A stretch of DNA of 64,000 bases from Rhodosorus marinus CCMP1338 (taxonomy: Eukaryota; Plantae; Rhodophyta), in the NCBI GenBank assembly GCA_029953675.1, contig JAMWBK010000007.1:186001-250000 (forward strand), read 5' to 3'. Positions within the stretch are counted from its first letter, which is position 1; every line of letters starts with the position of its first letter. The translations under genes were made by a program, and so were the position numbers. The notes under the pieces were generated by a model. The model ran no database searches and had not been told where the DNA came from. It saw only the letters and a program-made list of their open reading frames with translations. This document shows, piece after piece, positions 1,963 to 46,872 of this stretch.

Positions 1963-2720
1963 ATGGTATCGTTTTCGACGGGTTTTGGAGCGGTGGGAGG
2001 GGAGGGGATATGTGGCTCCTACGAGCAAGCTAGTATGGACGAAGATGTTCAGCAAAGGCTTTATAGAGTCTGTTATCTGTAATAGAACTCTTCAATGCAG
2101 GTTCTGGTCACCCGAGCTGTTCTCCACTGGTCAGACCGATATTGGTCTTTGGGCTTCGTTTGTTCCTGGGAAGTAGAGAAACGATCATGTATGATCTTCT
2201 GCAGGGAATTGATATGTCCATTTTCTCTAAGATCGATAGCTTGAAGTGGATTCCTCGTCCCAATCCTAACTGTTGCCTTCTCCAGCGGCGTTTTCCTAAA
2301 ATTCTGACCAACACAACATCGTGCTCGACGGGTTTCGGGTATCAATGTTCCTGGGAACAAGCGACGAGGATATACGATTGTTGGCCCAGATCTGACATCT
2401 ATAGTCGATGCCCCCAAGCGAATTCCATACCCCAATCCCAATCACGCCCGCCTCCAGGAGCGTTTCCTAAAACCCCTGATTGTCAATACAATATCGGCTG
2501 CCCCGTCCATATGAGGCTCCTGCTGACGGGAGCTTTTGGTCTTTTAGACAAGAGTTGCTTCTCGCTGGCTTCGTCGGGTCTTTCGTAATGACCCAGGACG
2601 TTTTAATAGCATCCTTAAGGAAGATCTCTTTGCCGAGTTGGCGCTCTTAACTGATCAGTCTAATCGGAGCCCATGCTCCCCGAACGAGGTACGCTACGAA
2701 GGGCGCGGAGAGTCTCTCCC
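1963..2720 (+). pseudogene. Decayed gene made of 3-4 degenerate ~60-aa (~180-nt) repeats
   Basis: Recurring units IVFDGFW / ILVFGLRLFLG...KWIPRPNPN / IVLDGFRVSMFLG...KRIPYPNPN are broken by stops and frameshifts. The last unit is homologous to 23349-23444. Confidence 0.35.
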
Positions 2721-3423
2721 CGCAACTCATAAGCCAGCGTTACATCGCCAGACTCGGAGAAGCATAGCCGATAAATAGCACCAGGGCGGTCACGGTAGCG
2801 CTCACGCAACTAAGTAAAACCTTCGCTATCGTCCAAAGCAACTTTCAGATCTGTACGAGATCAGATGAGGTTCACTCGCATTTCCTCCCTTTCGTTCGTG
2901 AGTTTCATGCTGCGGCGTACTAGAGCGATCTTAGTTTAGGGTTTGGGTGGTGAGACTTTATGGTTTTACAGAGCTAGGGATTGGAGATCCTAAGGGCGGT
3001 AATCCAAGCAAGTAGGTCAGATTTTTGCGGCTTATCATGTGGTTGATGCATCCTTAGCTAGCTTCGCAAATTTTCCTAATACGTCGGAACGCAGATCTCT
3101 AGCTGAGCACAGCTTTCTGGTTAACAGTTCTCTGACGTTTCCCACTCTGAATGGTCTGCTCCTCGTATCGGAATCAAGGTGCAGCCCAATCACCCTGTCC
3201 TGACCGCCAGGCTGGAACAGGCATGGAGATATCAACAATCTTCCAGATCAGGTTTGGACGTTGATGAAGCAGGTGGATCTCCCCTTCAACGTACTTGAAG
3301 AGCTTGGGTAGAACGTTGTAAAGCCCTGAAGATTCGTGCTTGTTTCTTTTCGTTTCGATTCATCTTAGTGACTCCTATGGAGTGATTTACAGTGTACAGT
3401 CCCGAGGACGATTGGTCGCATGC

Positions 3424-8549: not shown

Positions 8550-8778
8550 ATTTCCGTTCTATACTCTCTTTATAAAACCAGTTCTAAACTAACAAACCTC
8601 CTCCTCCCCCCCCAAACCCCGCCCGCACCAGAAAAGAAAACTCAACCAAAACGGCAGACGCCCCCTCCCCCGCGCCCCCTCTCCTCGTCCAGTCTTCCAC
8701 TGATTTTATCTACTACTTCACATTCTCGAAACAAATAAACTGTAGAGTTCTTAATCGCTCCAAAAAATCAGCAAAGAC

Positions 8779-8792
8779 CTCTCCCTCTCCCC

Positions 8793-8868
<76 letters not shown>

Positions 8869-8935
8869 TTCTCTATCTCTTTCTCTCTCTGTCTCTGTCT
8901 CTGTCTCTGTCTCTCTCTCTGTGTCTCTCTCTCTG

Positions 8936-9010
<75 letters not shown>
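8779..9010. repeat. (CT)n/(CTGT)n microsatellite, about 230 bp, upstream of RNF121
   Basis: Directly visible dinucleotide run. Confidence 0.98.
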
Positions 9011-9011
<1 letters not shown>

Positions 9012-10052
9012 CTCATCGTCCCCTTCCTCTTCCAATTCTCAAGAGGCACTTTGCCAAAGGTCCTTCCCATTCACCCCGCTGTCCTTGGGACACGTTTTGC
9101 AACCTCTGCTGTTCCCAGTTGTCCCAGGGTTGTCGGTTGTCAGGGGTAGACCTGAATGAATCGGTTAATAGAAGGCTAAGGTCCCCGAATGAGGTACTCT
9201 GGGAAGAGCGCATACAGCGCGCCTCCAAAACTAAGGCAGCATTCAAGTGCAAGAGAGTTAAAACTCGAAGAAACATACAGTCGGGAAAGAGCATCAGGGC
9301 GGTCGCGATAACGCTTGCGCAACCAAGCACTCCTAGCGCTATCTGAGAATCCAAAGACCTCGTTAACAAAGCAATAAGCAAGGCGCAATCTGCAAAGCCA
9401 GACAGCGTTGGTAAGCAAAATTTGGAACCTCTACTCTACCGTTCCCAGTTATCCTAGAGGTTAGACCTAGTGAATCAAGCCTACCTCTTGTTTTTAGTAT
9501 TTCGGTTTGTCTGCTTTGAGGTCGACTTGACAGAGTCGCCCACGGTGAAAAACAATTTGCCTAAGAGTACTAGTGATACTCTGGCTTTCAGAGAGATGCT
9601 ACTACAGTTTCGCCGTTCGCGACTTTGCCAAGGAGGTAGTGCTTTTTCTCTCTGTAGGCGTATCCTTGCACCTCCAGGCGCGCTTTGTATACCGGCTCCT
9701 TTGTGTCCCACGTTTCGTGCATCTAGTTCTCTCAAGGCTTCCACTTCTCTATTTTTTTTTAGACGCCGTTTTCCCGTACATGAAAGAAACGAATGAGCGC
9801 AAGAGTACTAGTGATGGTCTGTGCAGAGTAGCTGGAGAGAGTAGTACAAAGATTGTCGATAGTGATGTTCGAACTCTCACAGGTTGCGTCAATGGTCTTT
9901 GAGAACACGATTTTTGTTTTTTTAATGGCATTTACTGCGTATGCGATAAGGTACGATACGGGACGGAGGCTATGGCAGTTCCTTTCCAGAAACCTAAGCG
10001 TGCAGCCAAATAACAGGAAAAATAGTCTCAGAGCGACGGGACCGTTGATGAA

Positions 10053-17569: not shown

Positions 17570-18035
17570 AACCATAATTAAGACTTTTTCGAAACAAATG
17601 CGTAGTTTAAAGTCTATAAATATTGTATATATTAAGAAAAGGATTAAGAGGATTAGAATTAGCATTTCCACGTTTCTATTCTGGGCAATAGATGGAGCCT
17701 TACGGCTTGTTTTTTTTTTGTATTCATCGCGCTGTAACCTGATAACCATAATTACGACGATCTAAATATAGATGCGTAGTTTTAAGTATGAATATATTGT
17801 ATAAGAAAAATAAAAAGATGTTGATGATTAGAATTAGAACCAAATAGTCTCTATTCTGGGATCTTTGTGTGGCGTGTGCTTTTTTTTTTTGTATTCGTCA
17901 CGCTGTAACCTGATAACCATAATTACGACGCTCTAAAAATAGATGCGCAGTTTTAAGTATTTGTATATTGTATAAGAAAAATAAAAAGATGTTCTTGACT
18001 AGAATTAGAACTAAGTTGTCTCTATTCTGAGAAAT
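17570..18035. repeat. AT-rich tandem repeat, about 2.7 copies of a 171-174-bp unit
   Basis: CCATAATTA anchors at 17572, 17746 and 17917. ATGCG(T/C)AGTTT, TTAGAATTAG, TCTATTCTG and GCTGTAACCTGATAA recur. Confidence 0.92.
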
Positions 18036-18049
18036 CGTGTGCCTTTCCA

Positions 18050-18313
18050 CATTCACACATCGTAGTACATACGGTAAGATCGATACGCACATGGCATACG
18101 ATGGGTGGATGCGGAATCATACCGTTACGGTTTCAAATGGAGGATACAGTTTGAACAGTACAAGATATCGATCATCTTCACATTATAGTAGAGTACTTAA
18201 GCCGAACATATCGGCCCATTAGTCAGTGGAACAATAAAGGAGGCACCGAAGTTTGGAGGGTGAAATCAGTTTCACCCTGAGGTCAAGGTCAGGAATCCTT
18301 GAAAATTCCAACA
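18050..18313 (+). repeat. Upstream LTR copy (5' part missing or diverged), ending ...TTCCAACA
   Basis: Aligns with 23027-23272 (CATTCACACATCGTA...GAGGTCAAGGT) and is followed directly by the PBS. Confidence 0.88.
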
Positions 18314-18325
18314 TGGTATCATCGC
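18314..18325 (+). promoter_or_regulatory. Primer binding site TGGTATCATCGC, tRNA-iMet-like
   Basis: TGGTATCA directly after the LTR-terminal CA is the usual start of a copia PBS. A mirror copy lies on the minus strand near 18811-18821. Confidence 0.8.
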
Positions 18326-18404
18326 TTGGTGCGATTTTGTAAGAACTGCTTGGTGCGTTTTTACGGGAATAGGGATTGTGTGTGGTGTTGCCTCAGGATG
18401 GCGG

Positions 18405-18680
18405 CGAGGACGAGGGGGAGTGTTGCAGAACACTGACGGTAGCGCGAAATCCATCATGCGCCCGAGGACGAGGGGGAGTGTTGCAGAACACTGACGGTAG
18501 TGCGAAACCCTTTAAGCGCGCGAGGGCGAGGGGGAGTGTTGCAGAACACTGACGGTAGCGCGAAATCCTTCAAGCGCACGAGGACGACGGGGAGTGTTGC
18601 AGAACACTGACGGTAGCGCGAGATCCTTCAAGCGCGCGAGGACGAAGGGGAGTGTTGCAGAACACTGACGGTAGCGCGAA
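18405..18680 (+). repeat. Tandem array of five 58-bp units, each a PPT plus the start of an LTR
   Basis: TGTTGCAGAACACTGACGGTAG starts at 18421, 18479, 18537, 18595 and 18653, each preceded by GAGGGGGAG or a one-base variant. Confidence 0.97.
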
Positions 18681-18701
18681 AGGTTTCCTTCAGGCGCGTC
18701 A

Positions 18702-18886
18702 TGTTCTGCAACGGTCCCCCTCGTCCTCGCCGCCATCCTGAGGCAACACCACACACAATCCCTATTCCTGTAAAAACGCACCAAGCAGTTCTTACAAAAT
18801 CGCACCAAGCGATGAGACCATGTTGGAATTTTCAAGGATTCCTGACCGTGACCTCAGTTTCATCCTCCAAACTTCGGTACCTTCCT
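18702..18886 (-). repeat. Inverted copy of LTR end, PBS, short internal region, PPT and LTR start
   Basis: Reverse complement of about 18240-18430. The ORF track shows the same peptide (PPRPRRHPEATPHTIPIPVKTHQ) on opposite strands. Confidence 0.95.
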
Positions 18887-19117
18887 GCCGCTGCTGACTG
18901 TGTTCTGCTGTTGCCGCTAATCTCCAAATCAGTATAAAGGAAACCAGACTTTGCAACAGCTTTAATCACTTGCCTACCGTTCTTTTCTACGACTAACGTT
19001 TTTCCATCTAAAGATATCTTTATCTAATGGAGAAACCGTTTTCAATTAAACTACTAAGACTGACATTCATTTATCTAATGGAGAAACCGTTTTCCATTAA
19101 TCTACTAAGACTGGCAT

Positions 19118-20076
19118 TCAATGAGCCTTCTGGAAGATAGTGTCCTTCAGCGACAACAGATCTCCTTTTCGCGTCTTCAGCTCGACCGTACCCATCTTGT
19201 CGAGGGTCTTCGTTGTCCCGTCCCCGAATGTGACGTCAGTGTCAGCCATCCTTGTGGGGCCTGAGAATGCATTCTCCGAGGTGCACATGTCGTCCGTTGC
19301 TCCAGAGTCCAGCACGAACCTCGCTGGAGCTCTGACGGCCGTCATTTCTGCTGGAATCTTCGCTTTTCCGGCCTGTTTTCCTCCTTGTCCTGCTCCTCAG
19401 GACAGTTGGCTCGGATGTGTCCGGGTTTCTTGCACCCGTAACACAGAAATCCCACGGGGATCTTCTTCTTCTTCTTCTGCACCGTTGTGACGTGGTGCGT
19501 GCTGGAATCCGTTTTGGACTTGATTTGCTTGGACCCTCGAAGTCGGTCCAGCTCCTCGAAGTCGTTACAGAAACCTGTCCAGCCTAGAGTTTTTTTTTTT
19601 ATCCTTCGCGGCATAGAACTTGAACTCCGCATACTAGTCGCCCCTCACCTCCAAAACCTTCCGAAGGACCCGACGTTTTTCTTCATCCGTTGGCGCCACG
19701 CCCGTTATCTCCCTGATCTCCGCAAACTGGGTTTGTAGCCAGTTCACCAGAGAGCGTGGCGACTCGTTGGTGTGCATCTCGCGCCAATGCACTTTGCCTC
19801 ACACGCTGTCTGCCGTCTCGCGGGAGGAGGGCTCGTATCTAGGCCGAAGTGCCGCCCATACCTGCTCTGGCGCTGCCTCTCTCGAAGAGGCAAAGGCAGT
19901 GTCCAGCGCCGGCCCATCCAGCACTCCGGAGAACACCGTAGAGACATACTGTCTCTCCTCTTCCGTCGCGTCTATCGGGTTGTCGATCACATCCCTAAGA
20001 CCTTTGACGGTCAGGTAGCACTCTACCTGGTGTCTCCAATTCCGGAAGGATCGGAACGAATCCTGATCCCCGGTGA
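19118..20076 (-). pseudogene. Copia gag and aspartic protease, inverted relative to pol
   Basis: FTGDQDSFRSFRNWRHQVECYL (gag N-terminus), CYGCKKPGHIRANC (CCHC knuckle), FVLDSGATDDMC (protease). Frameshifted. Confidence 0.92.
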
Positions 20077-22966
20077 ACACTGACGTCACATTCGGGGACG
20101 GGACAACGAAGACCCTCGACAAGATGGGTACGGTCGAGCTCAAGACGCGAAAAGGAGATATGTTATCGCTGAAGGACACTATCTTCCAGGCGGCTCATTG
20201 AATGTAGTCAGTCTTAGTAGATTAATGGAAAACTGTTTCTCCATTAGATCTTTAGATGGAAAAAATTTGTCGTAGAAAAGAACGGTAGGCAAGTGATTAA
20301 AGCTATTGCAAAGTCTGGTCTCCTTTATACTGACTTGGAGATTAGCGGCAATAGCAGAACACAGACAGCAGCGGCAGCAGTAGTCCGTAGCAACGAAGAT
20401 ACGGATGCCATGGGATGGCACAGGAGGCTCGGACACCCTGGTGCTGGAGCTGTGAAACAACTAGAAAAGGACGGTGTTTTCCGCGTGAACGACAGAGTAC
20501 CTGACAAGTTCGAATGCTCCAGCTGCGAGAAAGCAAAGACCGCGATGGGTGGAAGTGGACCTCGCAGGAAGGCAGAGACGTTCGGCGAGTGCATACATAC
20601 TGACATCGCCGGACCGTTCCGTGCAGGAAGACATGGAGAGATTTATATGGAGGAGGAGTGTTCGTGGATGAGGCAACAGGGGTGCTGGGAGCGCATGCCC
20701 GTGAACACAGAAGTCTCATTGATGAAGGCTTTAGGGAGCATGTCCTGGTAATGAAAACGCAACATGGGGCAAATGTAGAAAGACTCAAAAGTGACAACGC
20801 ACTTGAGTATAGTAGCATGAAACCCCTACTACATGACCTGGGTATCACGTGGGACCCGAGCGCCCCGTATACTCCCTCCAGCAACGGGATAGCGGAGCGA
20901 ATGATGAGAACAGACTCAGAAAGACTGCGTGCCACCATGTTCGACAGCGGAGCGACGGACGACATGTGGCCGGAAGCACTACCGGTAGTCGTCGCCAACA
21001 TCAATCAACCCCACGAAAGTTCCTGAAAGGGAAATGTCCAGCCGACACAGATAGGGGCAGCAACATGGATCTGGGAAACGCATATCCGTTTGGGTGTGAG
21101 ATCACATACAAGCGGTACGAACCGGGGAAACAGGGTAAACTGGATAGCAGGTCCAGTACAGGAATCCTCATGTTCGTAGCGGACTCACATGTGGCGAGGA
21201 TCTGGGATCCGACAACTGATAGGTTCCTACAATCGCGATCTTGGCGCGTTTCTGAAGACGTCTTCCCGACCAAAGAAGTGAATCTCGAAAAACGAATGAC
21301 TTCAAGACCCAGAGGAAGGGAGGTTTCAGTGAACCTCCTGCGGAAGGGGGACTCCTTGTACGACGTACCGAGTCCGGAGTCTTGGAATGAAGCGTTCAAC
21401 GGCGCTTTCGCTGAAGACTGGAGACGAACTGCGGCCGAAGAGCTCGGATCGTTACGGGCGAACCGGACATGGGAACTTGTCCCTCGGAGCGAGGTTCCCA
21501 GGAAGGCGAGGATTCTTGGGTCACGACTTATCCTGAAAGTCAAGAAAAATGCAGATGGATCAATTCAACGGTTCAAGGCGCGACTCGTAGCTCGAGGATT
21601 TGCCCAGAGATATGGCAGTGACTACGAGGAGGTCTTCGCGCCAACGGTGGAGTTCGCCAGCGTTCGAGTACTCCTGACCATAGCAGCGACGGAAGATCTC
21701 GAAGTGGAGCAGGGTGATCTGAAGACTGCGTACCTGAATGCGAGCCTGCAGGAAGAGATTTACATGATGCAGCTTCGCGGCATGGAGGAACCGGGAAAGG
21801 CGGAGCACATCTGCTGCCTACGGAAGAGCTTGGAGGGCCTAAAACAAGCGGGAAGAGAGTGGCACCGGAAACTAAGCAACGATCTCCTTGCGCAAGGTTT
21901 TTAGCAGCTGCGAACAGAAAGCTGCGTGTACCGGAAGGAGAAGTGCATCATCGCGGTCTACGTAGATGATATGCTTATCGTTGGGAGCCGGGCTGACGTT
22001 GAGATAACGAAGAAGATGTTGTCAAACCTGTACGACATCAAACCTCTAGGAGCGGCACGAGATTTCCTCGGTGTGAGAATAGAGCGAGACCGGAGGAAAA
22101 GAGAAATCTACCTCTCGCAGGCAGATCATATTCGGAAACTTACCCTCGCGTACGGTTTGAAGGGATGCCGCCCCTTATCCACACCAATCTCCATCGCACC
22201 CTCTACGAAAGAGACTTCGATGGAAATGACCTCATCGCCGTTTCAGGAGCTAACTGTATCACTCCTCTACTTAAGCACTACAACGCGAGCTGATATAAGT
22301 TACGCAGTCGCCTTGATCGCGCGAAAAATGGCAGATTATCGACTCGGAGATTTCGAAAAGGCGAGGCGGATCCTGCGATATTTGGCAGGAACGCAGAGAA
22401 AAGCAATGCAATTGGGGGGTAAATAAAAGACGGATGCAGGTATGGGCAACTCCTCGGACGATGGTGAGCAGAGGCAAATCAGATATCAAGTGACCGGATA
22501 CTCTGTTGCGAGCTGGGCCAGTCACGAAGACAGTAGGAGTACTTCAGGTTTGTTGGTGACAGGCGATGGAGCGCCAGCGGCTTACCGATCATGGAAGCAA
22601 CGCTCGGTGGCTCAATCGACGGCGGAAGCGGAGTACCAGGCGCTGGGGGACATGATGACGACCCAGAGGTTGGTACACGAGTTCATCGTCGAGACTGGCA
22701 GGGACATGAGTATGCCCTTAGTCGCATACAAGGACAACATGTCGTGTCTGCGGTGGGCGACATCCGGGGATAGCAGGATGTCGCGCCACGTATCTGTCAA
22801 ACTTCAGTACGCACGCGAGAGGTGTGCGTCCGAAGAGGTACAGCTGAAGTACCTCAGCACCGACGAGATGGTGGCTGACCTGTTGACCAAGCCTCTGACG
22901 AAGGAGAGGACGGAGATATTGAGGTCCGGGCTGGGCATTGTAGATCGACTCTCTGCTGTGGTATGA
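20077..22966 (+). pseudogene. Copia pol remnant: protease tail, GAG-pre-integrase, integrase, RT, RNase H
   Basis: WHRRLGH, IHTDIAGP, SDNALEY, PSSNGIAER, RFKARLVARGF, QGDLKTAYLN, GLKQAGREW, AVYVDDML, GYSVASWA, STAEAEY, DLLTKPL. Frameshifts in the integrase. In-frame stops at 21902 and 22424. Confidence 0.95.
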
Positions 22967-22970
22967 GAGC

Positions 22971-22979
22971 GAGGGGGAG
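22971..22979 (+). promoter_or_regulatory. Polypurine tract GAGGGGGAG
   Basis: Purine run just after the RNase H stop and directly before TGTTG. Confidence 0.85.
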
Positions 22980-23466
22980 TGTTGAAACAGTCAATCGCGA
23001 CCATGCGCTCTCAACACGTAGAAGGGCATTCACACATCGTAATACATACGGTAAGACCGATACGCACATGGCATACGATGGGTGGATGCGGAATCATACC
23101 GTTACTGTTTCAAATGGAGGAAACAGTTTGAACAGTACAAGATATCGATCATCTGACTGTTATTACAGTAGAGTACTTAAGTGGAACATATCGGCCCATT
23201 AGTCAATGGAACAATAAGGAAGGTCGGTACCTTCACTTCGGTAAATTTGGAGGATGAAACGGAGGTCAAGGTACGCTGCAGCTATGTTGGACTCTACGCT
23301 CCGCGATTCGGCCTTGTCCTATCGGTTTGTTCCACTCATCATCGAGTTTGCTTTGGTTTAGTTGATTGTGTCGGCTCTCGTTGGCTTCGTGGGCTCTTTC
23401 GTAACAGCCCCAGTCGCCTTGACAGCCTCCTCACGGAGCTGTTCTTGACCTTGTGGCATTCCAACA
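22980..23466 (+). repeat. 3' LTR (TGTTG...CAACA) with about 170 bp of extra internal sequence
   Basis: Starts TGTTGAAAC after the PPT. The right end is placed at CCTTG...ATTCCAACA by similarity to the end of the upstream LTR and is less certain. Confidence 0.75.
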
Positions 23467-24326
23467 CGGCTTTCTTGTTCGCCGCGCGTCATCAGCGTCT
23501 TGTTTCTCGCTTCTCAGGGTAGTTAGGCTCTGATAAACTGATGATGAATCCTTGCGCAAATTTCCAACGCCTTTGTTTCGTTTTTCGGGATATTAAGGAT
23601 TTTTTGAGGGTCTTGGAGAGACCTTTTTTGGCGTTTTTCTTTGGCGAATGGTATTTTTTAGGGGTCCGATAAATAGTACGATAAACGTTGTAAGATCTGA
23701 ATTTAGAAATAATAAATAGCGTTTGCTGAGGACACTATCGTTCGATATAGGTCTATTAAACCTGAATAGAAAATAAATAAAAGGTTTCATCCGATAAATG
23801 GTCCGATAACCAGCGAAATTACCGTCCAATATTGTAAACTCCCTTCAGAAGTGGTTGTTTTACTCCAATTCATTTCCACCTTCCAATGTTATGACAGCCT
23901 GTCAACCTCAGAAGTATTCATTATTCATTACATGGTAGTGACAGTTTCTAATAACGAAAAGTAATTTAAATTCATAATATGAGAGAGAGCTTCACCACGG
24001 TGATGATTGATTATTAGGTTAGCGTTGATTGAATATTGGACCTCTTTATCGGACGAGAAATAGGACCTGTTTATTTAAAGAATATAAATCAGACATCCCG
24101 CAAGTTTGTATTTTTTGTAATATTGTACTGATTTGAACATTTATCGGACGCGTCAGATAAACGTTATTGGACTGTCTATGACAACCGGATTTTGAGGCTT
24201 CGTTCTTGTTGATGGAGAGAGGTGAAAGAGTAGTTTCTGGGAGAGAAGGGAAAAGAGCTTGAAGAGATTGTGTGACACTCTGCACTATGCATTTGTGAGA
24301 GCTTTGGCAGTAGGGAGCTTTTGGGT

Positions 24327-29717: not shown

Positions 29718-31875
29718 TGCGATTATCACTAAATACCAATGCAAAACGTTCCTCCTTCCCCCCCAAATTTCTGTCAATTATCTCAAGGGATCCTCAGACC
29801 CCCCTCTCAGCTATCTAACATGAAGATTCCCCAATAAGCCTCCGCTCGCTGCACCCCAACCCAACCCATCTTGCGGGGTAAACCACCACAAACCCCTCCA
29901 AAAAAAACAAAAAAGAAGTCGAGAAAACTATCTACCTGTCTTACGGAAAGTGCAGATCAACACTGGCGCCAGCAAAGCCACAAAATAAGAAGAAAAGAAG
30001 ACCCAGAACTATAACAAACCCACCTTGCCTCAGCTCCTACCACATCCTTCACCCTCTTTGCCCCTAAGCCATTCCTCATCAAATTCCCGTTCCCTCCCTT
30101 TACCTGTCCCATTGACGCTGTCCCACTGAATCGAATGTGCGACGTGGCATATTGTTTCATAAAACAAAGTAATGTCAATCAACATTGTATCACTTTGACC
30201 AATAGAAGAACACAGGGGAAATAGATCAATCATTACAAGGATTTAGTTTTTTTTTGCTTTGGAGAGAAGTGAGGAGCGAGGAAGGGGAGGATTGGGGATG
30301 CCAGAGAGGGACTGTCGAGAGGGCGGTTTAGAGTTCACGTGGGAGGTATGAAGACAGAAGAACATGGAAGGAATTACAAGCACAGACGATTCTCTTTTGT
30401 GTTATATCGGGGTGCTATCTTTGCGGTTTGATTGCTGCATTTTAGCAAAAAAAAGAAAAGAGGCTTGGCGGGTTTTCATGGACGCGATCTGTTGCCGTCG
30501 TTGGAGGGCCTGTGGAGTGGTTTCATCGCGCTCCAGCTCAAGTTATTTGCTTGGAGTCTTCTACGCAGTGAGTTTAAGAAAATCTGAGAGGCGCTGATTC
30601 AAAGGGCGTCGACTCTCCGTCAGATCGCGATGACCTGGACGTGGTCTTGGTCCCGTTTGCTCTCTGAGCAGCAACTACCCACCTTCACAATCGCGAGGAC
30701 CGTATTCATAGTGCGATAGCGGAGTTGAACAAGATTCTCTGGCAAGCAAATGCTCAACTCATTCTGCATGGAAAGGATCGGGCTGATCCTCCTGATTTTT
30801 CGCAACGCTATAGTAGAATGACCACTCTGATGCTCTTTCTAGACTGTAGTCTTCTTTGCTTTTGAACCTATCGCGATGTAACGGTGCCTTAGCTCTGGAG
30901 CTGTGCGCCTTCCTAGCGTATCTCATTTGGGGACCTTAGCCTCCGATTGAACTGATCTGGCAGTAGAATGAGACCCCAGGACATACGGTTTTGGGTTTAT
31001 TAAGAGCGCTTTGAGAGTCGTTGCGTTCCGCTGCGGTATGTAGGCACCAATCAAAGGCTACTAGGGCAAAAATGGATTGACAATTACGCCAGGACTCCGC
31101 CGTGAATGTCCCATTTTAGAGCAGCGCGAAAACGTCCCAGCTCAATCAACAACTATCCTGTTGGCCAATAGTACGTGGAAATTCTTACTTATCAATCATT
31201 ATCACGGCGATACCCCTCAGTAGTTGTCCCGATTCGTGTGGGACATGAATTCGAAAAGTGAAAAAGATACTACATCAATCAATGAACGAGAAAATGGCCA
31301 ATAGAAGACCAAATGGAGATTGATCAATCATTATATATATGTCCTCATTAAGTATCATCGGCTGTAATATGGGTTTTGGGTTTTGGCCATGTGGATTTAT
31401 TGAGCAAATGTGAAAAGGACCCGTTCGGGATATTTTTGAAAGTTGTGTGTGTTTTAGAAGGCGTTATTTAGTAAGTGCTGGGTGGGCCTGCGAGTTCGGA
31501 ATGGGGTGGGTAGGAAGGTTTACGGGTGAAGGAAGAGGAGTGATTATGAAACAGATGAGAGAGTAAAATTTCCTTGTTGACTGGGATTTTGAGAAGGAGG
31601 ATATTTGGAAGGCTGAAGGGTCTTAGTGAGGTTGGATAGAGGAGGAAAACGTCGGTGTGGTTTGGTAGAGGCAAGTTCATTTGGGTTTGGAAGCGGTGGG
31701 GGAGCGGAAACGACCGATTTTGTTCTATAGTTATGGCTGTTGTCTGGAGTGGTGGGTAGGATTGTGTGGTAGGTTTTAAGGTGTTTGTCTTTTGATCCCT
31801 GCGGTTTGTCTCTGGTGGGTGAGCAGGTGGAACGAACCAGTTTGACTGGATGTCTGGTCAGGTTCGGTGGTGTAG

Positions 31876-34800
31876 ATGAAATCGTTTTGGAAGAAGAATT
31901 TCCACACGCCGTCTAAGAAGAAGACGTGCGTAGTCGAAATCTCCAGCCATGTGCTTGTTGGCAACTATGTCGAGGGCCATTTCGATGAGGACTTACAGGA
32001 CTTCCTGGAAAGGCGGAGGAGAAAGACGGGTAGCACAGTAAATAAAGTGCTTATAATTGATGTGGGACCCGATCCGTGGATGTACGAGGTTGCTCCCGGA
32101 GTTGTGGTCTCTGAGCCCTGCCATGTCGGACCGTTCCTTATGCTGCCAGGTTTGAATTCAGTTTTCGAGACTTGCGCAGATATCGTTGACTGGTTCAAAA
32201 CGAACGCTTTTGACGGCTGCGGAGTAGTTTTGATAGTCGCGTCATCTTCCTTCCCCAACTTCAATCGGCTGGCGCCTGTTGCATTGGTCCGCATCGCCCT
32301 CCTCCCAATGCCAACCTAAATTCCCGAATACCACGCATGTTAGTTACAAACTGACGATCATACATTTTGGTGGTTTTTCGACGGTTTTTCCCAGGTCGCG
32401 TCTTCACTGCTGATGTACATTAATAGAGCTGATAGCGCACTAGACGCGCTTGAAACGTTCCTCTCGAAATCGCGAGAAGCTCACCTGGTTGGCGCTGACA
32501 AACTTGGGGACCCGACAGTAAAACTTCCCAACTTGTGCAAGTATCTCAAGCTCTTCTCAAAGTTATGCCTGAAGCCCCACTTCCCCGTAGTGATTCCCCT
32601 GGAGATAATGAAGATTATGTTCCAGGGCAAGCTCAAGCTATCGAAGAAGCAAAGGTGGAACCCGATTATTAGATTTTACGTGTTTGCCAAAGGGCAAGGC
32701 GAAGGAGAATGGTACGTTGCTGCTGCGTCAATCAAGTGGGCGCTCTAGCACGGAAGCTTGAGCTTGTGCCCAGTGTACTACGGGAATAGGCTTCCTGTTA
32801 CTGCTGTTCATGGCTCCATCGCTGAACCAACTGTGATTTGGTTCTACCATCTTTTGCAGTATGGTTATTGGACAGAGTGACTACCGCGGAGACGTGATTT
32901 ATGGGGATGAGTTTGCGTCTTTCCAAGTTAACACGCTGGCGTTTGGAGACTTTGTCCTCAGCTTTGAGCACCACTACCCAAAGGAGAATCGGACGAAACC
33001 TCTGTTTTCTATAGCTCAGCATACGAGCTTCCTGAGCGCTCCGTACACTCGTTTCAGAGCTTCCGACCTGGAGGTCTACCCGGACGCGAAGGACATCGTG
33101 ACCATTGACAAGGACTTCACAGTAGACGTTTTTCTACGTACAATGCCCGCTGTTACCGGTAATGCCCAGCTTCTCCTTCCTTTGCTTTCCAGTCTCCGCA
33201 AGTTCCAAGTTCACCCGCCCCGCTAACGATCGCTCTCATGCTTCATCATCATCTCGTTCAGAGGCCTACGTAAAAAGTGCCGCTGCTATGGCAGAAGAGT
33301 ATGGGAAGGTAACAGTCGGGATGCTGGACCTAGTGACGAGCCAAATGTTGTCGGTCGAGGAGATCGTGAGCTTGAGACCTTCTGATGATCCTCTCGTTCC
33401 CAAAATATCCCCCAAGGAGATGCAGAGCACACTCCAGGCGCAGTCCGAAGCGCTCCACAAAATGCTTGACAACGTACCCGATGACATGATCGCAGACGTC
33501 TTGACCACTTTCGATCAATACCAAGATGCTGGACAGGTATGATGCATGCATCCCGTGTGCTAATGGAGCCGATAGGTAGAGCCAACTTTGCTGCTCGGAC
33601 GTGCTGAAACTAAACTTGAAATTGTGAACAGAGGGCGACGGGTAGTGAGCGAACAAGCGGAGAGGACAGAACTCGTGAGTACCTGAACGCCGAGGACGAG
33701 GACGAGCTGGACCAAATCTTGCAGGAGGACTTCGGAGGCGATTTTCACATTATCGAGAATGACGAAGAAGCCTGGAACTCTGATGCCGAATTGGACTCGC
33801 CAACAGAAAGCGGTCAAGCCATCCCAATAGTTATAGAAGGTAAATCATATGCCAAGCCTTGAGTCTTTTGCAGGGTCCGTTGACTCTTGAACGTACTCAT
33901 TGGGCTGTGTTTTTCTAACGAATAATTCTAGACGATCTAGATTCTTCGTCTGAAGAAACGAGATCAAAGAAGAAGAAAAAGCGGAAAAGAAAGGCAAGAG
34001 AAAGCGTGGAAGAAGATCCTTCCATCGAGCAGATCGAAGACGAGCAAGATGGTAAAAAGTAGCAAAACCTCAGCGCAATGAATTCCTCAGCCGATTGTCT
34101 TAGAACAACACCAACTCTGCTGTTTTACAGATCATCTGGAGCTCACAGCCATCGATGCGTCAAACCTGATCTTGGAGGTGAGTCTCTGGAAGCAAAAGTC
34201 ACGACATACTTTTCGCAGTTTTTAAGCTAGTCTCCCAATTTTTCTAGGTCGATGAAGTCGTCCCTCCCCCGGCCATGCCGCTGCCAGACTTTGATGAACA
34301 CAGGCGTGTAGCAGCTGGAGGTGATACCAACCTGGAGGAATTGATGCCAAATTTCTTGCAAGGTGAGGATTTGGCACCTTCAGAACACATTTCATTTGGC
34401 CTCAAAGTCGCGTGCTCACGATTGAAATCTTTTTTGGCATGTGTCATTGTAGTCGGGGACGACGGAGAGTTCGTGCCAGCCGAAGAAGGCGAATCTGGAG
34501 ATGGGGAGGAGCAGGAGAACGTACCCATATGGATGATGGCTCAGTTTGAATCGGTGCCAAGCCCTACCGAACCTCCGGGCGCTGAAGCCTACGGTAGCGC
34601 CGCTGGTGTTACGCTTGCTGCAGCTGGAGCGCCTCCACCACCACCACCACCACCACCACCACCGCCACCGCCTAAGGCTACCGTGTCGGGTGCGAGTGAG
34701 GACTCAAAGCCCGTAGCTACACCACCGAGACCGGCGGTGACGGCAGTCGAAGAGTCAACTGCGAGTCCAGTGCTACCTCCCCCACCTCCCGCTTTGAGCA

Positions 34801-37800
34801 ATAGGGCGAAAAGCTCAACGCCAACAGATGCCCCAGCTCCGCCTCCACCACCCCCACCGAGGGCAGAAGCGCCATCTGATGGAACCGTTGCGCCGCCTCC
34901 ACCACTGCCGCCGCCTCCGCCTCCTCCGAGAGCCAGGACTTCAAGCTCTTCGACTGGAGAGAACGCTGCACCCCCACCGCCGCCTCCGCCTCCTCCGAGA
35001 GCCAGCACTCCAAGCGTTTCGACTGGAGAGAACGCTGCACCCCCACCGCCGCCACCGCCGGTGCAGAGGGCGAGCGGGTCATCCGAGGGAACGGCCCCTC
35101 CGCCACCGCCGCGGGCACCTCCCGGGGTAGGAGGAAGCGGAGAAGGGACATCCCAACCGGCCCCTCTGCCTCCGCCCCCGCCACCTCCCGCGGGAGCAAG
35201 TGCCTCCACGACGGACCCGGTAGCAGTGCCACCCCCACCTCCTCCGCCACCGCCCAGGGGAGCAAGTGTCTCCGCGACGGGACTGGTAGCAGTGCCACCC
35301 CCACCTCCTCCGCCACCGCCCAGGGCCTCCGAGACAGAACCGGCGGCAGTGCCACCCCCACCTCCTCCGCCGCTGCCGAGGAAAACCGATGCGAACGCAG
35401 ACTCTGTTACTGCACCACCTCCTCCAATGAGTTCGTTTGGTACGCCGGCGCTGCCTAAGGCAGATCCAAGTGCACCAGTCTCCGGACCGCCGGAACCCCC
35501 TGGAGTCCCCGCACCACCACCTCTCGCGGCCGGAGGAATAGCTCTACGAAAAGCTGCTCCGATGCAAAAAAAGCGAAAGGACGTGAAGGCTCTCCATTGG
35601 CAGACGATTCCGTCGCATCAAATTCAGAACACTATATTTACGTACGCAAAACGCCAACCCAGAACGCTCTCACAGCGCCGCCGATGCATAGTGTTTTGGT
35701 AAGGACGCTTCTGACACGAAAAGGGATTTTCTCCGCCGACTGCAAACCAGGACTGTTCAGACGGACTCTGCTGAGAAGGAGCTGGCGAAGAGAACCAAAG
35801 AGTTGGAAGAGCTTTTTAGCAATGCCGCGAGCAGACCACAGCCGACGCAAGCGGTTGCATCGAACCCGACTGGTATGCAGCAAACTGCGTCCGCTGGTGT
35901 ACTTGAACCGAAACGCGTAATGATCTTCGAAATTGCGCTGAAGAAGTTTGAGGTAGGTGGTAAAAAGGAATTGATGTCACGGGCTTATTTGATAGCTTTG
36001 AAAGTAGCGGCTACTCACGGCGATGTTGCTTGCGCTCTATCTGCTCTGATTTTCTCAAGGTTGAACCGGAGCAGATTGTCCGAGCCGTGAGCATGTTGGA
36101 TCCGGAAGGAGACTACTTGTCCGAGGATAATGTCAGTGTTCTGCAGACACTCAAAGCAGCCGAAGACGAAACCACCAGGGCAATGGCTTACGGCGGCGCT
36201 GATGCTCAAATCGCGAAGCTCAGTAAGAGCGAGCAGTTTATTATCTATATGTCGCGCGAGCTGCGCTGGACAACTAAGTTGAAGGCCATTCAAGCTATTC
36301 GCAACTATCGACAGTATGCGGATCGCCTTTACGAGATGATGGACAGTGTCATGAAGGCCTCCGCGGAGGTTCGTGAAAGCGACAAGTTCCGAACCGTTTT
36401 AGGAAGTATACGCTGCACGCCACCGCATATAGCCGTCAGCAACGGAAGAAACTGAAACTAGCTCTGCTGTAACGCCCGCCAAAAAACAGTCGTTTTATGG
36501 TTTGGCAACTACTTGAACCAGGGCACTCGGCGAGGAAAAGCTAAAGGCTTTAGATTGAGCGCTCTGCCCAAGCTCGCTGAGGTACGCTCCAAGGAGAAAG
36601 GAACAACTCTACTCCAGTATATGGTGGCAACAACTGCGAAAAAGGAGCCAGAACTCCTCAGCTTCCCGGAGGAGTTCGTTAGGGTGAAGGGCGCGTCGAG
36701 GATAAAGAAGGAAGACATCAGCATGGAGCTCTCCGAGTTTGACGTCTACATGAGGCATCTGACGTCCGAAACGAAGGCAATTGTCAAGGAGCACAACCTG
36801 CCGGAGCAGCTGTTGGATGGTCCGCGACGTACGTTCCACTCTCAAAAATGACCCTCTGCCTTGGAAATCGTCCGATTACCTCTGACTTTGTACCGCCCTG
36901 TACCGACGTTTTCCAAGAACAGCCAACGCTGCTCCCGTAGACATTCAGAAGATATTGGATCGATACTTTGTTGCGGAGAAGTCGCTTTCGGAGCTCAAAG
37001 GAATGTACGACGAGATGGTTGCTGAGGTTAAAGAGCTTGCGCTTTACCTCGGGGAGGAAAGCAGGAACCCGCGCTCGGAGGAGATTTTCGGAACTCTGAG
37101 TGCCTTCATGGAATCCTTTGTCCAATGCCGAACAATCGTTTTGGAGCAGGAGGAGAGGGCTAAGAAAGCAGCGAAGAAGGCCCAAAAAAGCAAAGGCACC
37201 CCTCTCGAGACCGGTGAGAGCCTTGAAAACAAAGGGAAGGAAGCGGCAGGCAATGCTGAGGCTACGGCCAATGTTGTAGCTCGCACTGGTTCTTCCGCCG
37301 ATGGAGCTGCAGAACCTGTGGCCGAGATAGGCTCTGAAAATCAGCGCGATACGGGGGTCCCTGTCAATGGCAAGAGCAACGTAAACACTGTTGTGGATTC
37401 TGCGGACGTGGTCGCGGATAGCGTTGGGAAGCTCACAACAGAAGATTTTGTTGAAGACTCCGACTTGCATTTCGCTGCTGAGAAACTGAGTATCGAGCAA
37501 GCTTCACCTCCCGTCGCCGTGGAGGAAACAGCTGTGCAGATAAAGCTAGAGCAAAACACGGTTGAACAGGGAAACCGTGAGAACCAGACGTCTGTGGGTG
37601 AGGAGCAAGGAGAAGAGAACATGCCACCTGGTTCGTCTGCTAACGTGGATGTCCAGCGATTGGAGACCGAGGAAACTCCTGAATTTTTGAGCCCGGAAAA
37701 TCCTAAACAAGCAATACCAGAGACAAGTCCGGTCCCGGAATCTGGGCTCGATGTTAAGCCAGCGCCTCAGGGTAGCGCAGGAGTCGCAAGCGGCATGCCA

Positions 37801-38016
37801 GCGGAGGGTTCCAACCTTAATAGCCTTCAAGGTGACGGGTCATCACACGTTGACCCTCAGCAAATGCCAGAAACCACAATGCATTCAGTCGAACTTGGTC
37901 AAGTGAGGTCAGAATCACCAGACATCGACTCTGAAGTCGAACTGGCGGAGACTGATGACGATTTCTTTGAGGAGGATGACGCCGAAGTCTGGAATCGACT
38001 GAACAGCGATAATTGA
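31876..38016 (+). CDS. Formin with PTEN-like pseudophosphatase and C2 N-terminus, polyproline FH1, FH2 and an acidic C-tail, multi-exon
   Basis: PTEN-C2-like exons (NPIIRFYVF, LFSIAQHTSFL, DFTVDVFL), FH1 polyproline at about 34630-35525, FH2 motifs KALHWQTIP, ELEELFS, IFEIALKK, GNYLNQGTRRGKAKGFRLSALPKL, TLLQYMV, LYLGEE...EEIFGTLSAF. Confidence 0.93.
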
Positions 38017-44524: not shown

Positions 44525-46872
44525 CGGAAACGGAGAAAAGCATGTACCCGGCACGTGCTTCACCCGGGTTTGCTGTGCGGGACTGCGATCTTCCAGATCA
44601 TCATTCCTGGGTACTGTTGTAAAGATGGCCTGACAATGATACCTCATACGTACATGTACTGGACGTATGCTCATCATTGTGAACAGCGAGCCATCGCAAT
44701 GTAATTTTCAGAATATCATACACCCTGCCAGGTGGAAATGGCAAATGAGTTCTAAACAAAGAATTATTTGATAATACGAATTCTTTTTTATTCAAATAAT
44801 ATTATTTTAAGAGCTATTTGTTTCTTTTTACTAATTTATCAGTAAATATCATGCTTTGTAAGAATAAATAATCACCCTCTTTGTTTTCTTTCAAAATATG
44901 TATATGTGCTGTCCGCTGGCTCTTTTCCCCATAGTGAGGTTCCCCACTCCTACTTCCGGCTACCCTTCTACTACGAAGTGCAACTCCGACTTAAGTACCG
45001 AATCTAGTTCTCGACTCCTAAGCCTGAATCTAAGCATCTAAACCCTTCAGTATCTCATTATCTAGAAGGTACACAAGATTAGCATCTGCCGGATGCCGTC
45101 CAAACTAATCTTCAGATTGCAAGTCCATGAAGAAAACTTGCTACCTCTGATAATACTAGATCAGGTCTGAAAAACTCTAGCTGAGCCTTCTGTGTTCAAT
45201 TCCAATTCGTTTGCTTCCCTCTCGGGACCATTCGACCTCCGGGTTTGGCACCTGCTTCTCAATTCAGTTGCCTTCGATTCCATTGAGGATGACTCCTCAA
45301 CATCTATTTGAAATCCCTTCTTCATAGGGATGTGCGAGGGTCGAACGGGGGAACTTCCTTAGCGTCGGTAGGAGCTTCAGCGCAGACGTTCTGCTCATAT
45401 CGGAGCCTCGCCGTCGCGTGCCAAAATCATGCGCCGCCGTAACCAAAACCCCTAAGCTGAAGCGCTTACTGATGCTAGGGTACTTCGATCGGCCCAGTGC
45501 AATCCGTTGTACTCCTCGTCGTTGAAGTTTTTGGGTGTATGGACAGTGCTGGCGTCCTCTGCATGCATGAGCACGGGAGGGGGCAACTTAATGTTCGGTA
45601 GCGGTTCCAATCTCTTCTTAGATTTGTCCCTTTGGCAGAATTCAGCGGCCGCCCTACTTCTTGAGGCTCAGTCCTTGCGCCGAGTGTTTTTCTCCCTTCT
45701 CGAGGGGTGCTAGCCCTTAAATAAAGTCCTCGGATTCAACGCGCCATTGAGTATGGTGTGCACTAGCAAACCATCTCATGTTCAGTTCAAGCTGGATATC
45801 AGCAAGCAACCAGAGGAAGAAAACATAAGATGATGAAGAAACCCAACTTGCAATAGCGCATGATCCGAACAGCTGCACCTCGCTCTCGATTAAACCCAAC
45901 TGTCTGCAGTCGCAGAGAACAACTAACGCGAGGATAAGGGGGCAGAGTCAGATCAACACGCGTACGACGGAGACTGTCCGCGCTCTCCATGCCAAGATCA
46001 GCTTCGTGTACGGACGGGGACTTCAGAATCATCGGCTCGGTTGCCGATGCTGGACAGCGGAGTTCGCCCGGGAGAGTGAGGAGGATGCCCTTGGGGGTGG
46101 TTGTAGTGGCGGTGAGGAGGCCAATAGCGGAGGGACACTCGAGGGCGCAAAACCCGCTATGAGACCAATATGGGTTTCTACAATTGGAACCTAAAGCGGT
46201 TTCAAACGCGGTCAATATTCCTAAAAGACTGATTTAGTCAGTGAGGAGTAGCGGCTAAAGCTGGAGTATAAGAGGACGTATGTTAAAGCGTCACCATGAA
46301 ATTCTGAGTTAAATCGCTGGATACCATCGACTACCTGGATACCATCGACTAGTTCTTTTGATGGAGATTGAAAAGCCCCTTTTCGAGTCCGAGATTCAAT
46401 GGCAGGTGACACTTATATGATTTTTTGGAGTTCATTAAGTAAAATAAAAGCAAGTAAAAGCCCCGATTTATGCAAAATTTGAAGATTGTCGGAATTGGTA
46501 CAGTACAGGTAACTATTTTCGTGCACTCTGTATGTAATTATTAAATAAATAACTATTATTTGTACACTGGCCAATATTGACATATGGAACATGGGTCGGT
46601 CGGACCAGGTGGGGAACTGTGAGTTTGAAGCGAGGGCGAAAGGACACTACTATTCCGCTGGCGCGAACCCTCCGGTAAAATACGCCAGGAATATTCTTCT
46701 CGAACGGGAACTCGCAAGTGATGCTCTGGATATCTGCACCCACGAGCGAGCTCGTTTAAGCCGTTCGTTCTCCAAGCTCGCCAGGGTAATCCTACCTGCC
46801 GTTGATTGATATGAGACGTCCCTGGAGATGGAATCGATGAAATTTGCAGACTGCTTAATACAATTTACAGCT

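What the first reader, a model, noticed from the sequence alone, without database searches (positions are those of the whole stretch)
23273..23446. 3' LTR contains a protein-coding fragment homologous to the decayed gene at 2.5 kb
Seen: about 170 bp are present in the 3' LTR but absent from the upstream LTR. They encode FGLVDC-VGSRWLRGLFRNSPSRLDSLLTE-LF, which aligns with FGLLDK-VASRWLRRVFRNDPGRFNSILKEDLF at 2532-2631 (one frameshift there). By hand, over 23 codons, 14 residues and 49 of 69 nt are identical, and 7 of the identical residues differ at the third codon position. That pattern indicates divergence under coding constraint. Inference: the LTR captured a host gene-family fragment, or the family carries an unrecognised accessory ORF in its LTR.
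Basis: partly seen in the sequence, partly recalled or inferred. Interest (0 to 1): 0.7.

Follow-up and report, generated by a model that had tools for sequence, protein, structure and literature searches.

The report
LINE tail fragment nested in copia LTR
The extra, coding-looking DNA in one LTR of a decayed copia-type retrotransposon of the red alga Rhodosorus marinus is the cut-off tail of a different mobile element (a LINE), and the look-alike at 2.5 kb is an older scrap of the same LINE family, so this is one transposon landing in another.

Summary
It spans about 23271-23547 (273-277 bp), not 23273-23446. It is absent from both other copies of this LTR end in the element. Its match to 2531-2654 is significant.

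The interpretation changes. The block is neither a host-gene fragment nor an LTR accessory ORF. It is the 3' end of a non-LTR retrotransposon (LINE) that is abundant in this genome, Rhodosorus marinus GCA_029953675.1. In locus L007, two diverged copies show a non-LTR reverse transcriptase followed by an R2-like CCHC knuckle. After that comes a C-terminal domain whose last ~90 codons, stop codon and short tail make up the block.

Copies share the 3' end and differ in how far they extend 5'. Across copies, dN/dS is 0.25 in the ORF frame and 0.95-1.43 in four of the other five frames (0.36 in the antisense frame that shares third positions).

[quoted passage not shown] There is no target duplication and about 3 bp of target is lost. 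The window holds at least three further scraps.

This is ordinary nested-transposon biology. The LINE family itself appears undescribed.

The parts
23271..23547 (+). 5'-truncated 3' end of a non-LTR (LINE) retrotransposon inserted in the 3' LTR. It carries the last ~85 codons of the LINE's C-terminal domain, the stop codon and a ~25-nt tail ending in TGA repeats. The strictly non-LTR part is 23273-23545, because 2 nt at each junction could belong to either partner. It has one frameshift relative to the open frame of copy L001.
   Evidence: It is 91% identical over 272 nt to L001 325-594, which has unrelated flanks. It is 71-75% identical to L003, L004, L005, L006 and three L007 copies. The external profile hits it with E=1e-72. 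tblastn with P0111/P0001 gives E=3e-16 and 2e-35. It ends where other genomic copies end.
22980..23569 (+). 3' LTR of a decayed Ty1/copia-type element, 589 bp including the LINE insert and about 312 bp without it. It starts TGTTG directly after a purine tract and ends ...TTTCCAACG.
   Evidence: Direct repeat with 18050-18243 at 92%. The similarity continues with indels to 23272, then resumes at 23546-23569 against 18291-18313. The purine tract is at 22970-22979.
18050..18313 (+). Upstream (5') LTR remnant. It lacks about the first 47 nt, ends ...ATTCCAACA, and shows the empty site for the LINE insert.
18314..18325 (+). Primer-binding-site-like sequence (TGGTATCATCGC) directly after the 5' LTR.
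   Evidence: Read directly from the sequence. From general knowledge, the match of its first 8 nt to the usual copia primer site for initiator tRNA-Met is recalled, not tested here.
18697..18882 (-). Inverted second copy of LTR end + PBS-like + leader. It gives a second empty-site reference for the LINE insert.
   Evidence: Inverted repeat with 18241-18438 at 90-97%. The junction was read.
18885..20076 (-). gag-protease part of the copia element, lying inverted relative to pol. It is broken by at least two frameshifts.
   Evidence: zf-CCHC (E=3e-4) and a weak DUF4219 match on minus-strand ORFs. A protease-like DSGA motif is on a minus-strand ORF. Inverted repeats 18885-19242 / 20077-20377.
20077..22966 (+). 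pol of the copia element (end of protease, integrase, reverse transcriptase, RNase H). It is broken by at least two frameshifts and two in-frame stops, and its 5' part is missing on this strand.
   Evidence: gag_pre-integrs 1.6e-12, SH3_retrovirus 7e-9, RVT_2 1.7e-35 and 3.9e-12. ORF layout.
2531..2654 (+). The 'decayed gene at 2.5 kb'. It is an old internal scrap of the same LINE C-terminal region, truncated or decayed on both sides, with one frameshift and stops.
   Evidence: External profile E=9.5e-16, profile positions 121-242. Score 31 vs shuffles 9.6 +/- 1.3. pS 0.58 and pN 0.24 against the family.
2729..2840 (-). Probable LINE scrap of a second subfamily, in inverted orientation next to the 2.5-kb scrap.
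   Evidence: Profile E=0.023. It is clearly related to the 9.2-kb scrap: score 35 vs shuffles 9.4 +/- 1.3.
9202..9370 (-). LINE C-terminal scrap of a divergent subfamily, with at least one frameshift.
   Evidence: tblastn with P0111 E=2e-7. Profile E=6.6e-4. The family motifs are visible in minus-strand ORFs.
45456..45725 (+). Probable old LINE 3' scrap reaching the family's 3' end.
   Evidence: Profile E=3.5e-6, profile positions 49-310. An ORF tail resembles the family C-terminus.
23181..23522 (+). It is a chance fusion of LTR sequence, an out-of-frame LINE stretch and the in-frame LINE C-terminus, and probably not a gene.
   Evidence: Only residues 57-113 match relatives. The stretch before that matches relatives in another frame. 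No Pfam family was found.

Best explanation
A LINE resident in the Rhodosorus marinus genome inserted a 5'-truncated copy of itself into the last ~25 nt of the 3' LTR of an already integrated copia-type element. This LINE carries a reverse transcriptase followed by an R2-like CCHC knuckle and a restriction-enzyme-like endonuclease (RLE)-type C-terminal domain.

The likely mechanism is target-primed reverse transcription. The element's endonuclease nicks the target, reverse transcription starts at the 3' end of the LINE RNA, and it aborts early. Only the last ~275 nt were copied: the end of the ORF, the stop codon and the short tail. The 5' end was then joined with 2 nt of exact overlap, with no target duplication and with loss of about 3 target bases.

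The fragment was dead on arrival. It lacks the catalytic part of the endonuclease and has one frameshift. The locus at 2.5 kb is an older, more decayed scrap of the same family. The codon-like divergence between the two reflects purifying selection on the LINE's ORF in the active source lineages, not a host gene.

Shown: the identity of the block, its limits, its absence from the other LTR ends, the domain order of the LINE, and the family-level constraint. Inferred: the insertion mechanism and its timing after copia integration.
For: 1. Source genome. The window is 100% identical to R. marinus GCA_029953675.1 contig JAMWBK010000007.1 over 3536 bp.

2. Independent copies. The block is 91% identical to L001 and 71-75% identical to six further copies. 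Their flanks are unrelated on both sides.

3. Link to a LINE. In L007, from the same genome, a 312-codon ORF ends with this block. It lies just downstream of an ORF that matches RVT_1 (2e-11) and matches LINE-1 ORF2p and R2 reverse transcriptases in the PDB (4e-10 to 6e-9). A second copy, only 36-47% identical in protein, has the same order on the other strand.

4. R2-like knuckle. The ORF's Cys/His knuckle aligns to residues 944-983 of an R2 protein (9nl2_A, E=7e-4).

5. Motif order. After the knuckle come RH, a D, a second D, K..KY and a G.RW-type motif, read from the translation (one search aligns only the C-terminal part). This is the order described for the R2 endonuclease (PMC4838377).

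6. LINE-like copy pattern. L007 holds 11 or more pieces in 22.6 kb. Five reach the same 3' end, and the 5' ends differ. The window insert ends at that same 3' end.

7. Coding constraint. Pooled dN/dS is 0.25 in the ORF frame. Four other frames give 0.95-1.43, and the antisense frame that shares third positions gives 0.36.

8. Empty site. It is preserved in two other copies of the LTR end.
Against: - No full-length LINE copy was seen, so the N-terminal part and the clade are unknown.
- The endonuclease assignment rests on motif order and one modest sequence hit. Pfam found nothing. A profile against the PDB found nothing. The AlphaFold model was poor (pLDDT 57, pTM 0.27) and Foldseek gave nothing.
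- There is no target-site duplication to prove transposition.
- The LTR side of the 5' junction resembles the LINE sequence just upstream of the truncation point (20 of 30 nt against L001, 3 of 1000 shuffles as good; not significant against L005 or L003). A template switch could also produce that.
- The copia element is heavily rearranged, so the 'upstream LTR' might not be the true partner of the 3' LTR.
- Other genomic copies of this copia family could not be fetched to check presence or absence.
Confidence: 0.88

Rival explanations
1. Capture rather than insertion. During reverse transcription of the copia RNA, the polymerase switched template to a co-packaged LINE transcript and back, so a new copia copy was born with a LINE piece in its LTR.
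For: There is no target-site duplication. There is short overlap at both junctions, plus an extended imperfect similarity between the LTR and the LINE just upstream of the 5' junction (20 of 30 nt against L001, 3 of 1000 shuffles).
Against: The piece ends exactly at the LINE's own 3' terminus, as other copies do. Target-primed reverse transcription predicts this, and a random template switch does not. The block is missing from the other two copies of the LTR end, whereas this end of the LTR is normally copied into both LTRs of a new insertion (general knowledge of LTR-element replication). The junction similarity is not significant against L005 or L003.
Confidence: 0.07
2. One reading: the LTR captured a fragment of a host gene family, and the 2.5-kb locus is a decayed member of that family.
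For: The fragment is coding-derived and the family shows purifying selection. One member is annotated as a hypothetical protein gene in the NCBI record (P0111).
Against: That annotated 'gene' sits inside a LINE copy directly after its reverse transcriptase. The family occurs as 11 or more nested pieces on both strands in 22.6 kb. Copies share a 3' end and vary at the 5' end. Many carry frameshifts.
Confidence: 0.03
3. One reading: this copia family carries an unrecognised accessory ORF in its LTR.
For: A 113-codon ORF spans LTR and insert.
Against: The upstream LTR end and its inverted duplicate both lack the block. Only the last 57 residues of the ORF match anything, and the stretch before them matches relatives in a different frame. 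All relatives lie outside LTRs.
Confidence: 0.01
4. Chance similarity between two unrelated low-information stretches.
For: The pair alone is short (87 nt, 69% identity) and its codon-position bias is only borderline.
Against: E=3e-7 in the window. About 16 standard deviations above shuffles. A profile built without any window sequence finds both loci (1e-72 and 9.5e-16).
Confidence: 0.01

Closest known systems
Non-LTR retrotransposons with a C-terminal restriction-enzyme-like endonuclease (R2, R4, CRE, NeSL/Utopia, Hero, Dualen groups)
   Same: The order is RT, then a CCHC knuckle, then a C-terminal domain with RH, D, D, K..KY and G.RW-type motifs (motif list from PMC4838377). Copies share a 3' end, vary at the 5' end, and pile into repeats of themselves. 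RLE-type LINEs are known to favour repetitive targets (abstract of PMC4640811).
   Different: Sequence similarity to R2 is confined to the RT and about 40 residues around the knuckle. No Pfam, PDB-profile or fold match was found for the endonuclease part. The copies seen here are dispersed, in an LTR, in intergenic DNA and in transcript contigs, rather than in one specific target such as 28S rDNA. The N-terminal half is unknown.
Nested transposon insertions (a LINE or another element landing inside an LTR retrotransposon), as catalogued in most eukaryotic genomes
   Same: A foreign, truncated element interrupts one LTR only, and the partner LTR preserves the empty site.
   Different: Nothing essential differs. 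The only unusual points are the absence of a target duplication and the scrambled state of the host element.
LTR retrotransposons that transduced host gene fragments (for example maize Bs1), and retroviral LTRs that encode a protein (for example the superantigen ORF of mouse mammary tumour virus); both named from memory
   Different: Here the sequence comes from another transposon. It is present in one LTR only, it is frameshifted, and it lacks a start of its own. There is no evidence that it is a functional part of the copia family.

Membership tests
Non-LTR retrotransposon (LINE), RLE-bearing type | Reverse transcriptase of the non-LTR type in the same element as the fragment | tested here: met
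   The L007 ORF upstream of the C-terminal domain matches RVT_1 at 2e-11. Its best PDB matches are LINE-1 ORF2p and R2 proteins. A second, diverged copy shows the same order.
Non-LTR retrotransposon (LINE), RLE-bearing type | Cys/His (CCHC) knuckle downstream of the RT, similar to that of R2 | tested here: met
   L007 C-terminal ORF residues 117-159 align to 9nl2_A (R2 protein) residues 944-983, E=7e-4. Weaker matches go to two other R2 proteins at the same relative place.
Non-LTR retrotransposon (LINE), RLE-bearing type | PD-(D/E)XK-type endonuclease fold and motifs after the knuckle (RH, D, D/E, K..KY, RG.W) | tested here: inconclusive
   The motifs are present in that order by inspection of the translation (the alignment covers only the later motifs), compared with PMC4838377. 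No statistical support was found: Pfam none, PDB profile none, model pLDDT 57, Foldseek none.
Non-LTR retrotransposon (LINE), RLE-bearing type | Copies share the 3' end, have variable 5' truncation, and lack terminal repeats | tested here: met
   Eleven pieces in L007 have different 5' limits, and five reach one 3' end. The flanks of transcript copies are unrelated on both sides. The window insert ends at the same 3' end.
Non-LTR retrotransposon (LINE), RLE-bearing type | N-terminal DNA-binding domains and target-site specificity | not testable with these tools
Ty1/copia LTR retrotransposon (the host element) | Integrase upstream of an RVT_2-type reverse transcriptase, with a gag zinc knuckle | tested here: met
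   gag_pre-integrs, SH3_retrovirus, RVT_2 and zf-CCHC were found. The genes are broken and gag-protease is inverted.
Ty1/copia LTR retrotransposon (the host element) | Direct LTRs with TG...CA ends, a primer-binding site after the 5' LTR and a purine tract before the 3' LTR | tested here: met
   Direct repeat at 92%. TGTTG follows GAGGGGGAG at 22970-22984. The 5' LTR ends CCAACA and is followed by TGGTATCA. The 5' LTR lacks its first ~47 nt and the 3' LTR ends CG, not CA.
   It is absent from two other copies of the LTR end. All relatives are LINE pieces. Other genomic copies of the copia family could not be examined.

The most novel reading that the evidence does not exclude
The LINE is a so far undescribed red-algal lineage of RLE-type non-LTR retrotransposons. 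It is still transcribed, since copies appear in JGI contigs that look like transcripts. Its ORF is kept under purifying selection. It inserts both dispersedly (LTR, intergenic DNA) and into its own copies. That would contrast with the strict site specificity usual for RLE-type LINEs.
Probability: 0.3. Interest if true: 0.3.

Novelty: new member of a known kind. Interest (0 to 1): 0.14.

Why it matters
It matters mainly for annotation. It removes a false lead (a captured host gene or an LTR accessory ORF). It also shows that at least one annotated R. marinus 'hypothetical protein' (NDN08_000224) is a LINE fragment. It gives a handle (RT, then CCHC, then the C-terminal domain) for masking an abundant, apparently uncatalogued LINE family in a red-algal genome whose transposons have not been described in the genome paper (PMC10250338). 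For transposon biology it adds one more RLE-type LINE from a poorly sampled lineage. Nothing here changes current understanding.

Tried and rejected
- Pfam on the LTR ORF, the 2.5-kb pieces, P0001, P0003-P0006, P0111, P0112 and the 312-codon LINE C-terminal ORF gave no family for this domain.
- A profile of the domain against PDB sequences gave only insignificant ribosomal-protein matches.
- AlphaFold2 on P0111 with a 9-row alignment gave pLDDT 57 and pTM 0.27. Foldseek against the PDB then gave only meaningless vimentin matches with E above 7. I draw nothing from them.
- The metagenome-contig scan with the peptide alignment gave one weak hit (28% identity, L002), which I did not use.
- The phmmer hit to an 861-residue scavenger-receptor-like repeat protein (P0002) covers only the LTR and out-of-frame part of the ORF, and its score is inflated by eight repeats. 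I judged it spurious.
- Rfam on 22900-23700 and a tRNA scan of the window found nothing, so a SINE or tRNA-derived origin has no support.
- I first suspected a MITE-like element, because L003 has inverted copies of the block's 3' end just upstream. I dropped this when the RT-linked copies appeared.
- I first guessed a diatom host. The exact match to R. marinus corrected this.
- A search for close relatives of the copia RT found none from this genome (best 77% identity on a 1.6-kb contig).
I then repeated that test on real copies only, and the report rests on that.

Full report
**Origin of the window.** A 511-codon ORF of the window (38393-39928, minus strand; POP1 domains) is encoded exactly in Rhodosorus marinus assembly GCA_029953675.1, contig JAMWBK010000007.1. 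The fetched 3536 bp are 100% identical to window 37393-40928. By offset, the window is bases 186001-250000 of that contig. This offset is an inference from the single anchor. R. marinus is a unicellular red alga, and the genome paper (PMC10250338) says nothing about nuclear transposons.

**The host element.**
- A 194/197-nt direct repeat (18050-18243 vs 23027-23223, 92%) brackets about 5 kb.
- Between the repeats lie gag_pre-integrs, SH3_retrovirus, two RVT_2 pieces and an RNase H-like tail on the plus strand. A zf-CCHC gag piece and a protease piece lie on the minus strand. This is a Ty1/copia-type element.
- The 3' LTR starts TGTTG at 22980, right after the purine run GAGGGGGAG, and ends ...TTTCCAACG at 23569.
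- The upstream LTR lacks about its first 47 nt. It ends ...ATTCCAACA at 18313 and is followed by TGGTATCA..., which resembles the usual copia primer-binding site (the resemblance is from general knowledge).
- The element is badly damaged. The plus-strand pol part has at least two frameshifts and two in-frame stops. The gag-protease part has at least two frameshifts and lies inverted between inverted repeats.
- A second, inverted copy of the LTR end plus leader sits at 18697-18882.

**The observation.**
- The match is well above chance: E=3e-7 in the window, and score 31 vs 9.6 +/- 1.3 for shuffles.
- The extent is wrong at the right end. LTR similarity stops at 23272. It resumes at 23546 with GAATCCTTG...TTTCCAACG, against GGAATCCTTGAAAATTCCAACA in the two other LTR ends.
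- The foreign block is therefore 23273-23545, with two ambiguous bases at each side, or about 275 bp.
- Both other LTR ends read straight through the site (...GGTCAGGAATCC...), so they act as the empty site. Three target bases (CAG) are missing in the filled site, and there is no target duplication.
- For the pair alone, the codon-position argument is only borderline, with P around 0.05.

**Relatives.**
- A word-index search with the 113-codon ORF found one protein (P0001, 88% identity over the last 57 residues).
- An exhaustive phmmer search found four more short proteins (P0003-P0006).
- Their contigs (L001, L003-L006; JGI samples 3300016967 and 3300017118; 1.3-3.5 kb, probably transcripts) share only a ~315-nt unit with each other and with the window. 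Their flanks are unrelated on both sides.
- L001 matches window 23271-23541 at 91%.
- A profile search then returned P0111, an R. marinus 'hypothetical protein' (NDN08_000224) that is 57% identical to P0001 over 91% of its length.

**Coding constraint.** I read codon columns from the open frame of L001 over the nucleotide alignment of six copies. No sequence was altered, and only ungapped codon columns were counted.
- Pooled pS is 0.50 and pN is 0.19, giving dN/dS of 0.25.
- Four of the other five frames give 0.95-1.43. The antisense frame that shares third positions gives 0.36.
- Every one of the 15 pairs has dN/dS of 0.55 or less.
- The 2.5-kb piece against the six copies gives pS 0.58 and pN 0.24.

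**What the unit is.**
- The locus of P0111 (L007, contig JAMWBK010000013.1) holds 11 or more pieces of the unit on both strands in 22.6 kb.
- One copy has a 441-codon ORF matching RVT_1 (2e-11). That ORF also matches LINE-1 ORF2p and R2 reverse transcriptases in the PDB (4e-10 to 6e-9).
- It is followed, through two frame changes, by a 312-codon ORF whose last ~90 codons are the unit.
- A second copy on the other strand is only 36-47% identical in protein. It has RT pieces followed by the same C-terminal ORF, and another copy has inserted into it.
- Residues 117-159 of the C-terminal ORF (a Cys/His knuckle followed by R..RH) align with residues 944-983 of an R2 protein (9nl2_A, E=7e-4).
- Downstream, the family shows a first Asp (..ADL..), a second Asp (Y.DL..), K..KY, a hydrophobic strand ending in E.FG, and an invariant G..W.R motif (for the whole order; for the conservation of the later motifs across copies).
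- This is the order CCHC, RH, D, D/E, K..KY, RG.W described for the R2 restriction-enzyme-like endonuclease (PMC4838377).
- Five L007 copies end at one 3' terminus (...CTCTGAATAAA plus a few bases), and 5' limits vary. The window block ends at that same terminus.
- Together these are the marks of a non-LTR retrotransposon with an R2-like C-terminal architecture. The window fragment begins just after the K..(K/Q)Y motif, so it lacks the catalytic residues.

- The 3' boundary coincides with the LINE's own 3' end.
- The 5' boundary is arbitrary.
- Two other LTR ends keep the empty site.
- The junctions show 2 nt of overlap and no duplication.
- The LTR side of the 5' junction also resembles the LINE just upstream of the truncation point: 20 of 30 nt against L001, with 3 of 1000 shuffles as good, but not significant against L005 or L003. 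This fits microhomology-assisted 5' joining. It also leaves some room for a template-switch origin, which I rate at 0.07.

**The 2.5-kb locus and other scraps.** A profile built only from the five external copies hits the following places in the window.

| Window coordinates | Strand | E-value |
|---|---|---|
| 23238-23547 | + | 1e-72 |
| 2531-2654 | + | 9.5e-16 |
| 45456-45725 | + | 3.5e-6 |
| 9214-9366 | - | 6.6e-4 |
| 2729-2840 | - | 0.023 |

- The 9.2-kb scrap is confirmed by tblastn (2e-7) and by visible family motifs.
- It is clearly related to 2729-2840 (score 35 vs 9.4 +/- 1.3).
- The 'decayed gene at 2.5 kb' is thus one of several old LINE scraps. It lies in intergenic DNA next to a coproporphyrinogen-oxidase-like gene, and a scrap of a second subfamily sits beside it in inverted orientation.
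- No RT of this LINE is present in the window.

**The 113-codon ORF.** Only its last 57 residues are LINE-derived in frame. The preceding LINE stretch matches relatives in another frame (one frameshift), and the first third is LTR sequence. It is a chance ORF.

**What did not work.**
- Pfam, the PDB profile search, AlphaFold and Foldseek gave no independent support for the endonuclease fold.
- Rfam and the tRNA scan were negative.
- The metagenome scan was uninformative.
- No close copia relatives from this genome could be fetched, so the LTR-family census remains to be done.
- My nhmmer run printed a profile consensus line by itself. I glanced at it for the junction, then redid that test on real copies.

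**Verdict.** The LINE family seems uncatalogued, so I rate it a new member of a known kind, with low interest.

Noticed in passing
window 18885-20377: The gag-protease part of the copia element lies inverted relative to pol. It is bounded by inverted repeats 18885-19242 / 20077-20377 (80% over 358 nt). The element is scrambled, not merely mutated.
   Followed up: partly
window 18241-18882: There is a palindromic structure here. LTR end + PBS-like + leader (18241-18438) and its inverted copy (18697-18882, 90-97%) flank five 58-bp tandem units (18404-18697). Each unit carries a 20-nt match (85-95%) to the purine-tract/LTR-start junction at 22965-22984. Its origin is unexplained.
   Followed up: partly
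window 17570-18032: An AT-rich tandem repeat with a period of about 171-174 nt (79-90% between copies) abuts the truncated start of the upstream LTR.
   Followed up: no
window 9202-9370 (-), 2729-2840 (-), 45456-45725 (+): These are further decayed 3' scraps of the same LINE superfamily. The first two belong to a second subfamily. That makes at least five LINE scraps in 64 kb and no RT.
   Followed up: partly
L007 1-22636 (R. marinus JAMWBK010000013.1: 827723-850358): This locus is a LINE graveyard, with 11 or more 3' pieces on both strands and copies inserted into one another. The annotated gene NDN08_000224 (P0111) is a LINE fragment joined by a 2.6-kb 'intron' to an upstream scrap. A long perfect 27-nt/9-residue tandem repeat ORF also lies at 8118-8935.
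   Followed up: partly
L003 345-453 and 775-816: In one transcript-like contig, the LINE unit is preceded by two inverted copies of its own 3' ~50 nt and followed by an inverted copy of an internal ~40 nt. This looks like a local rearrangement or hairpin-like structure.
   Followed up: no
window 8743-9060: A long run of 8-12-nt units reads as (LS)n in one frame. It lies directly beside the 9.2-kb LINE scrap.
   Followed up: no
window 9160-9304 and 30820-30956: A pair of 146-nt stretches is 74% identical in inverted orientation (E=8e-15). This may be another dispersed repeat, possibly part of the second LINE subfamily.
   Followed up: no
window 34275-35702: A 475-codon ORF contains proline-rich 57-69-nt tandem repeats (34897-35381).
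   Followed up: no
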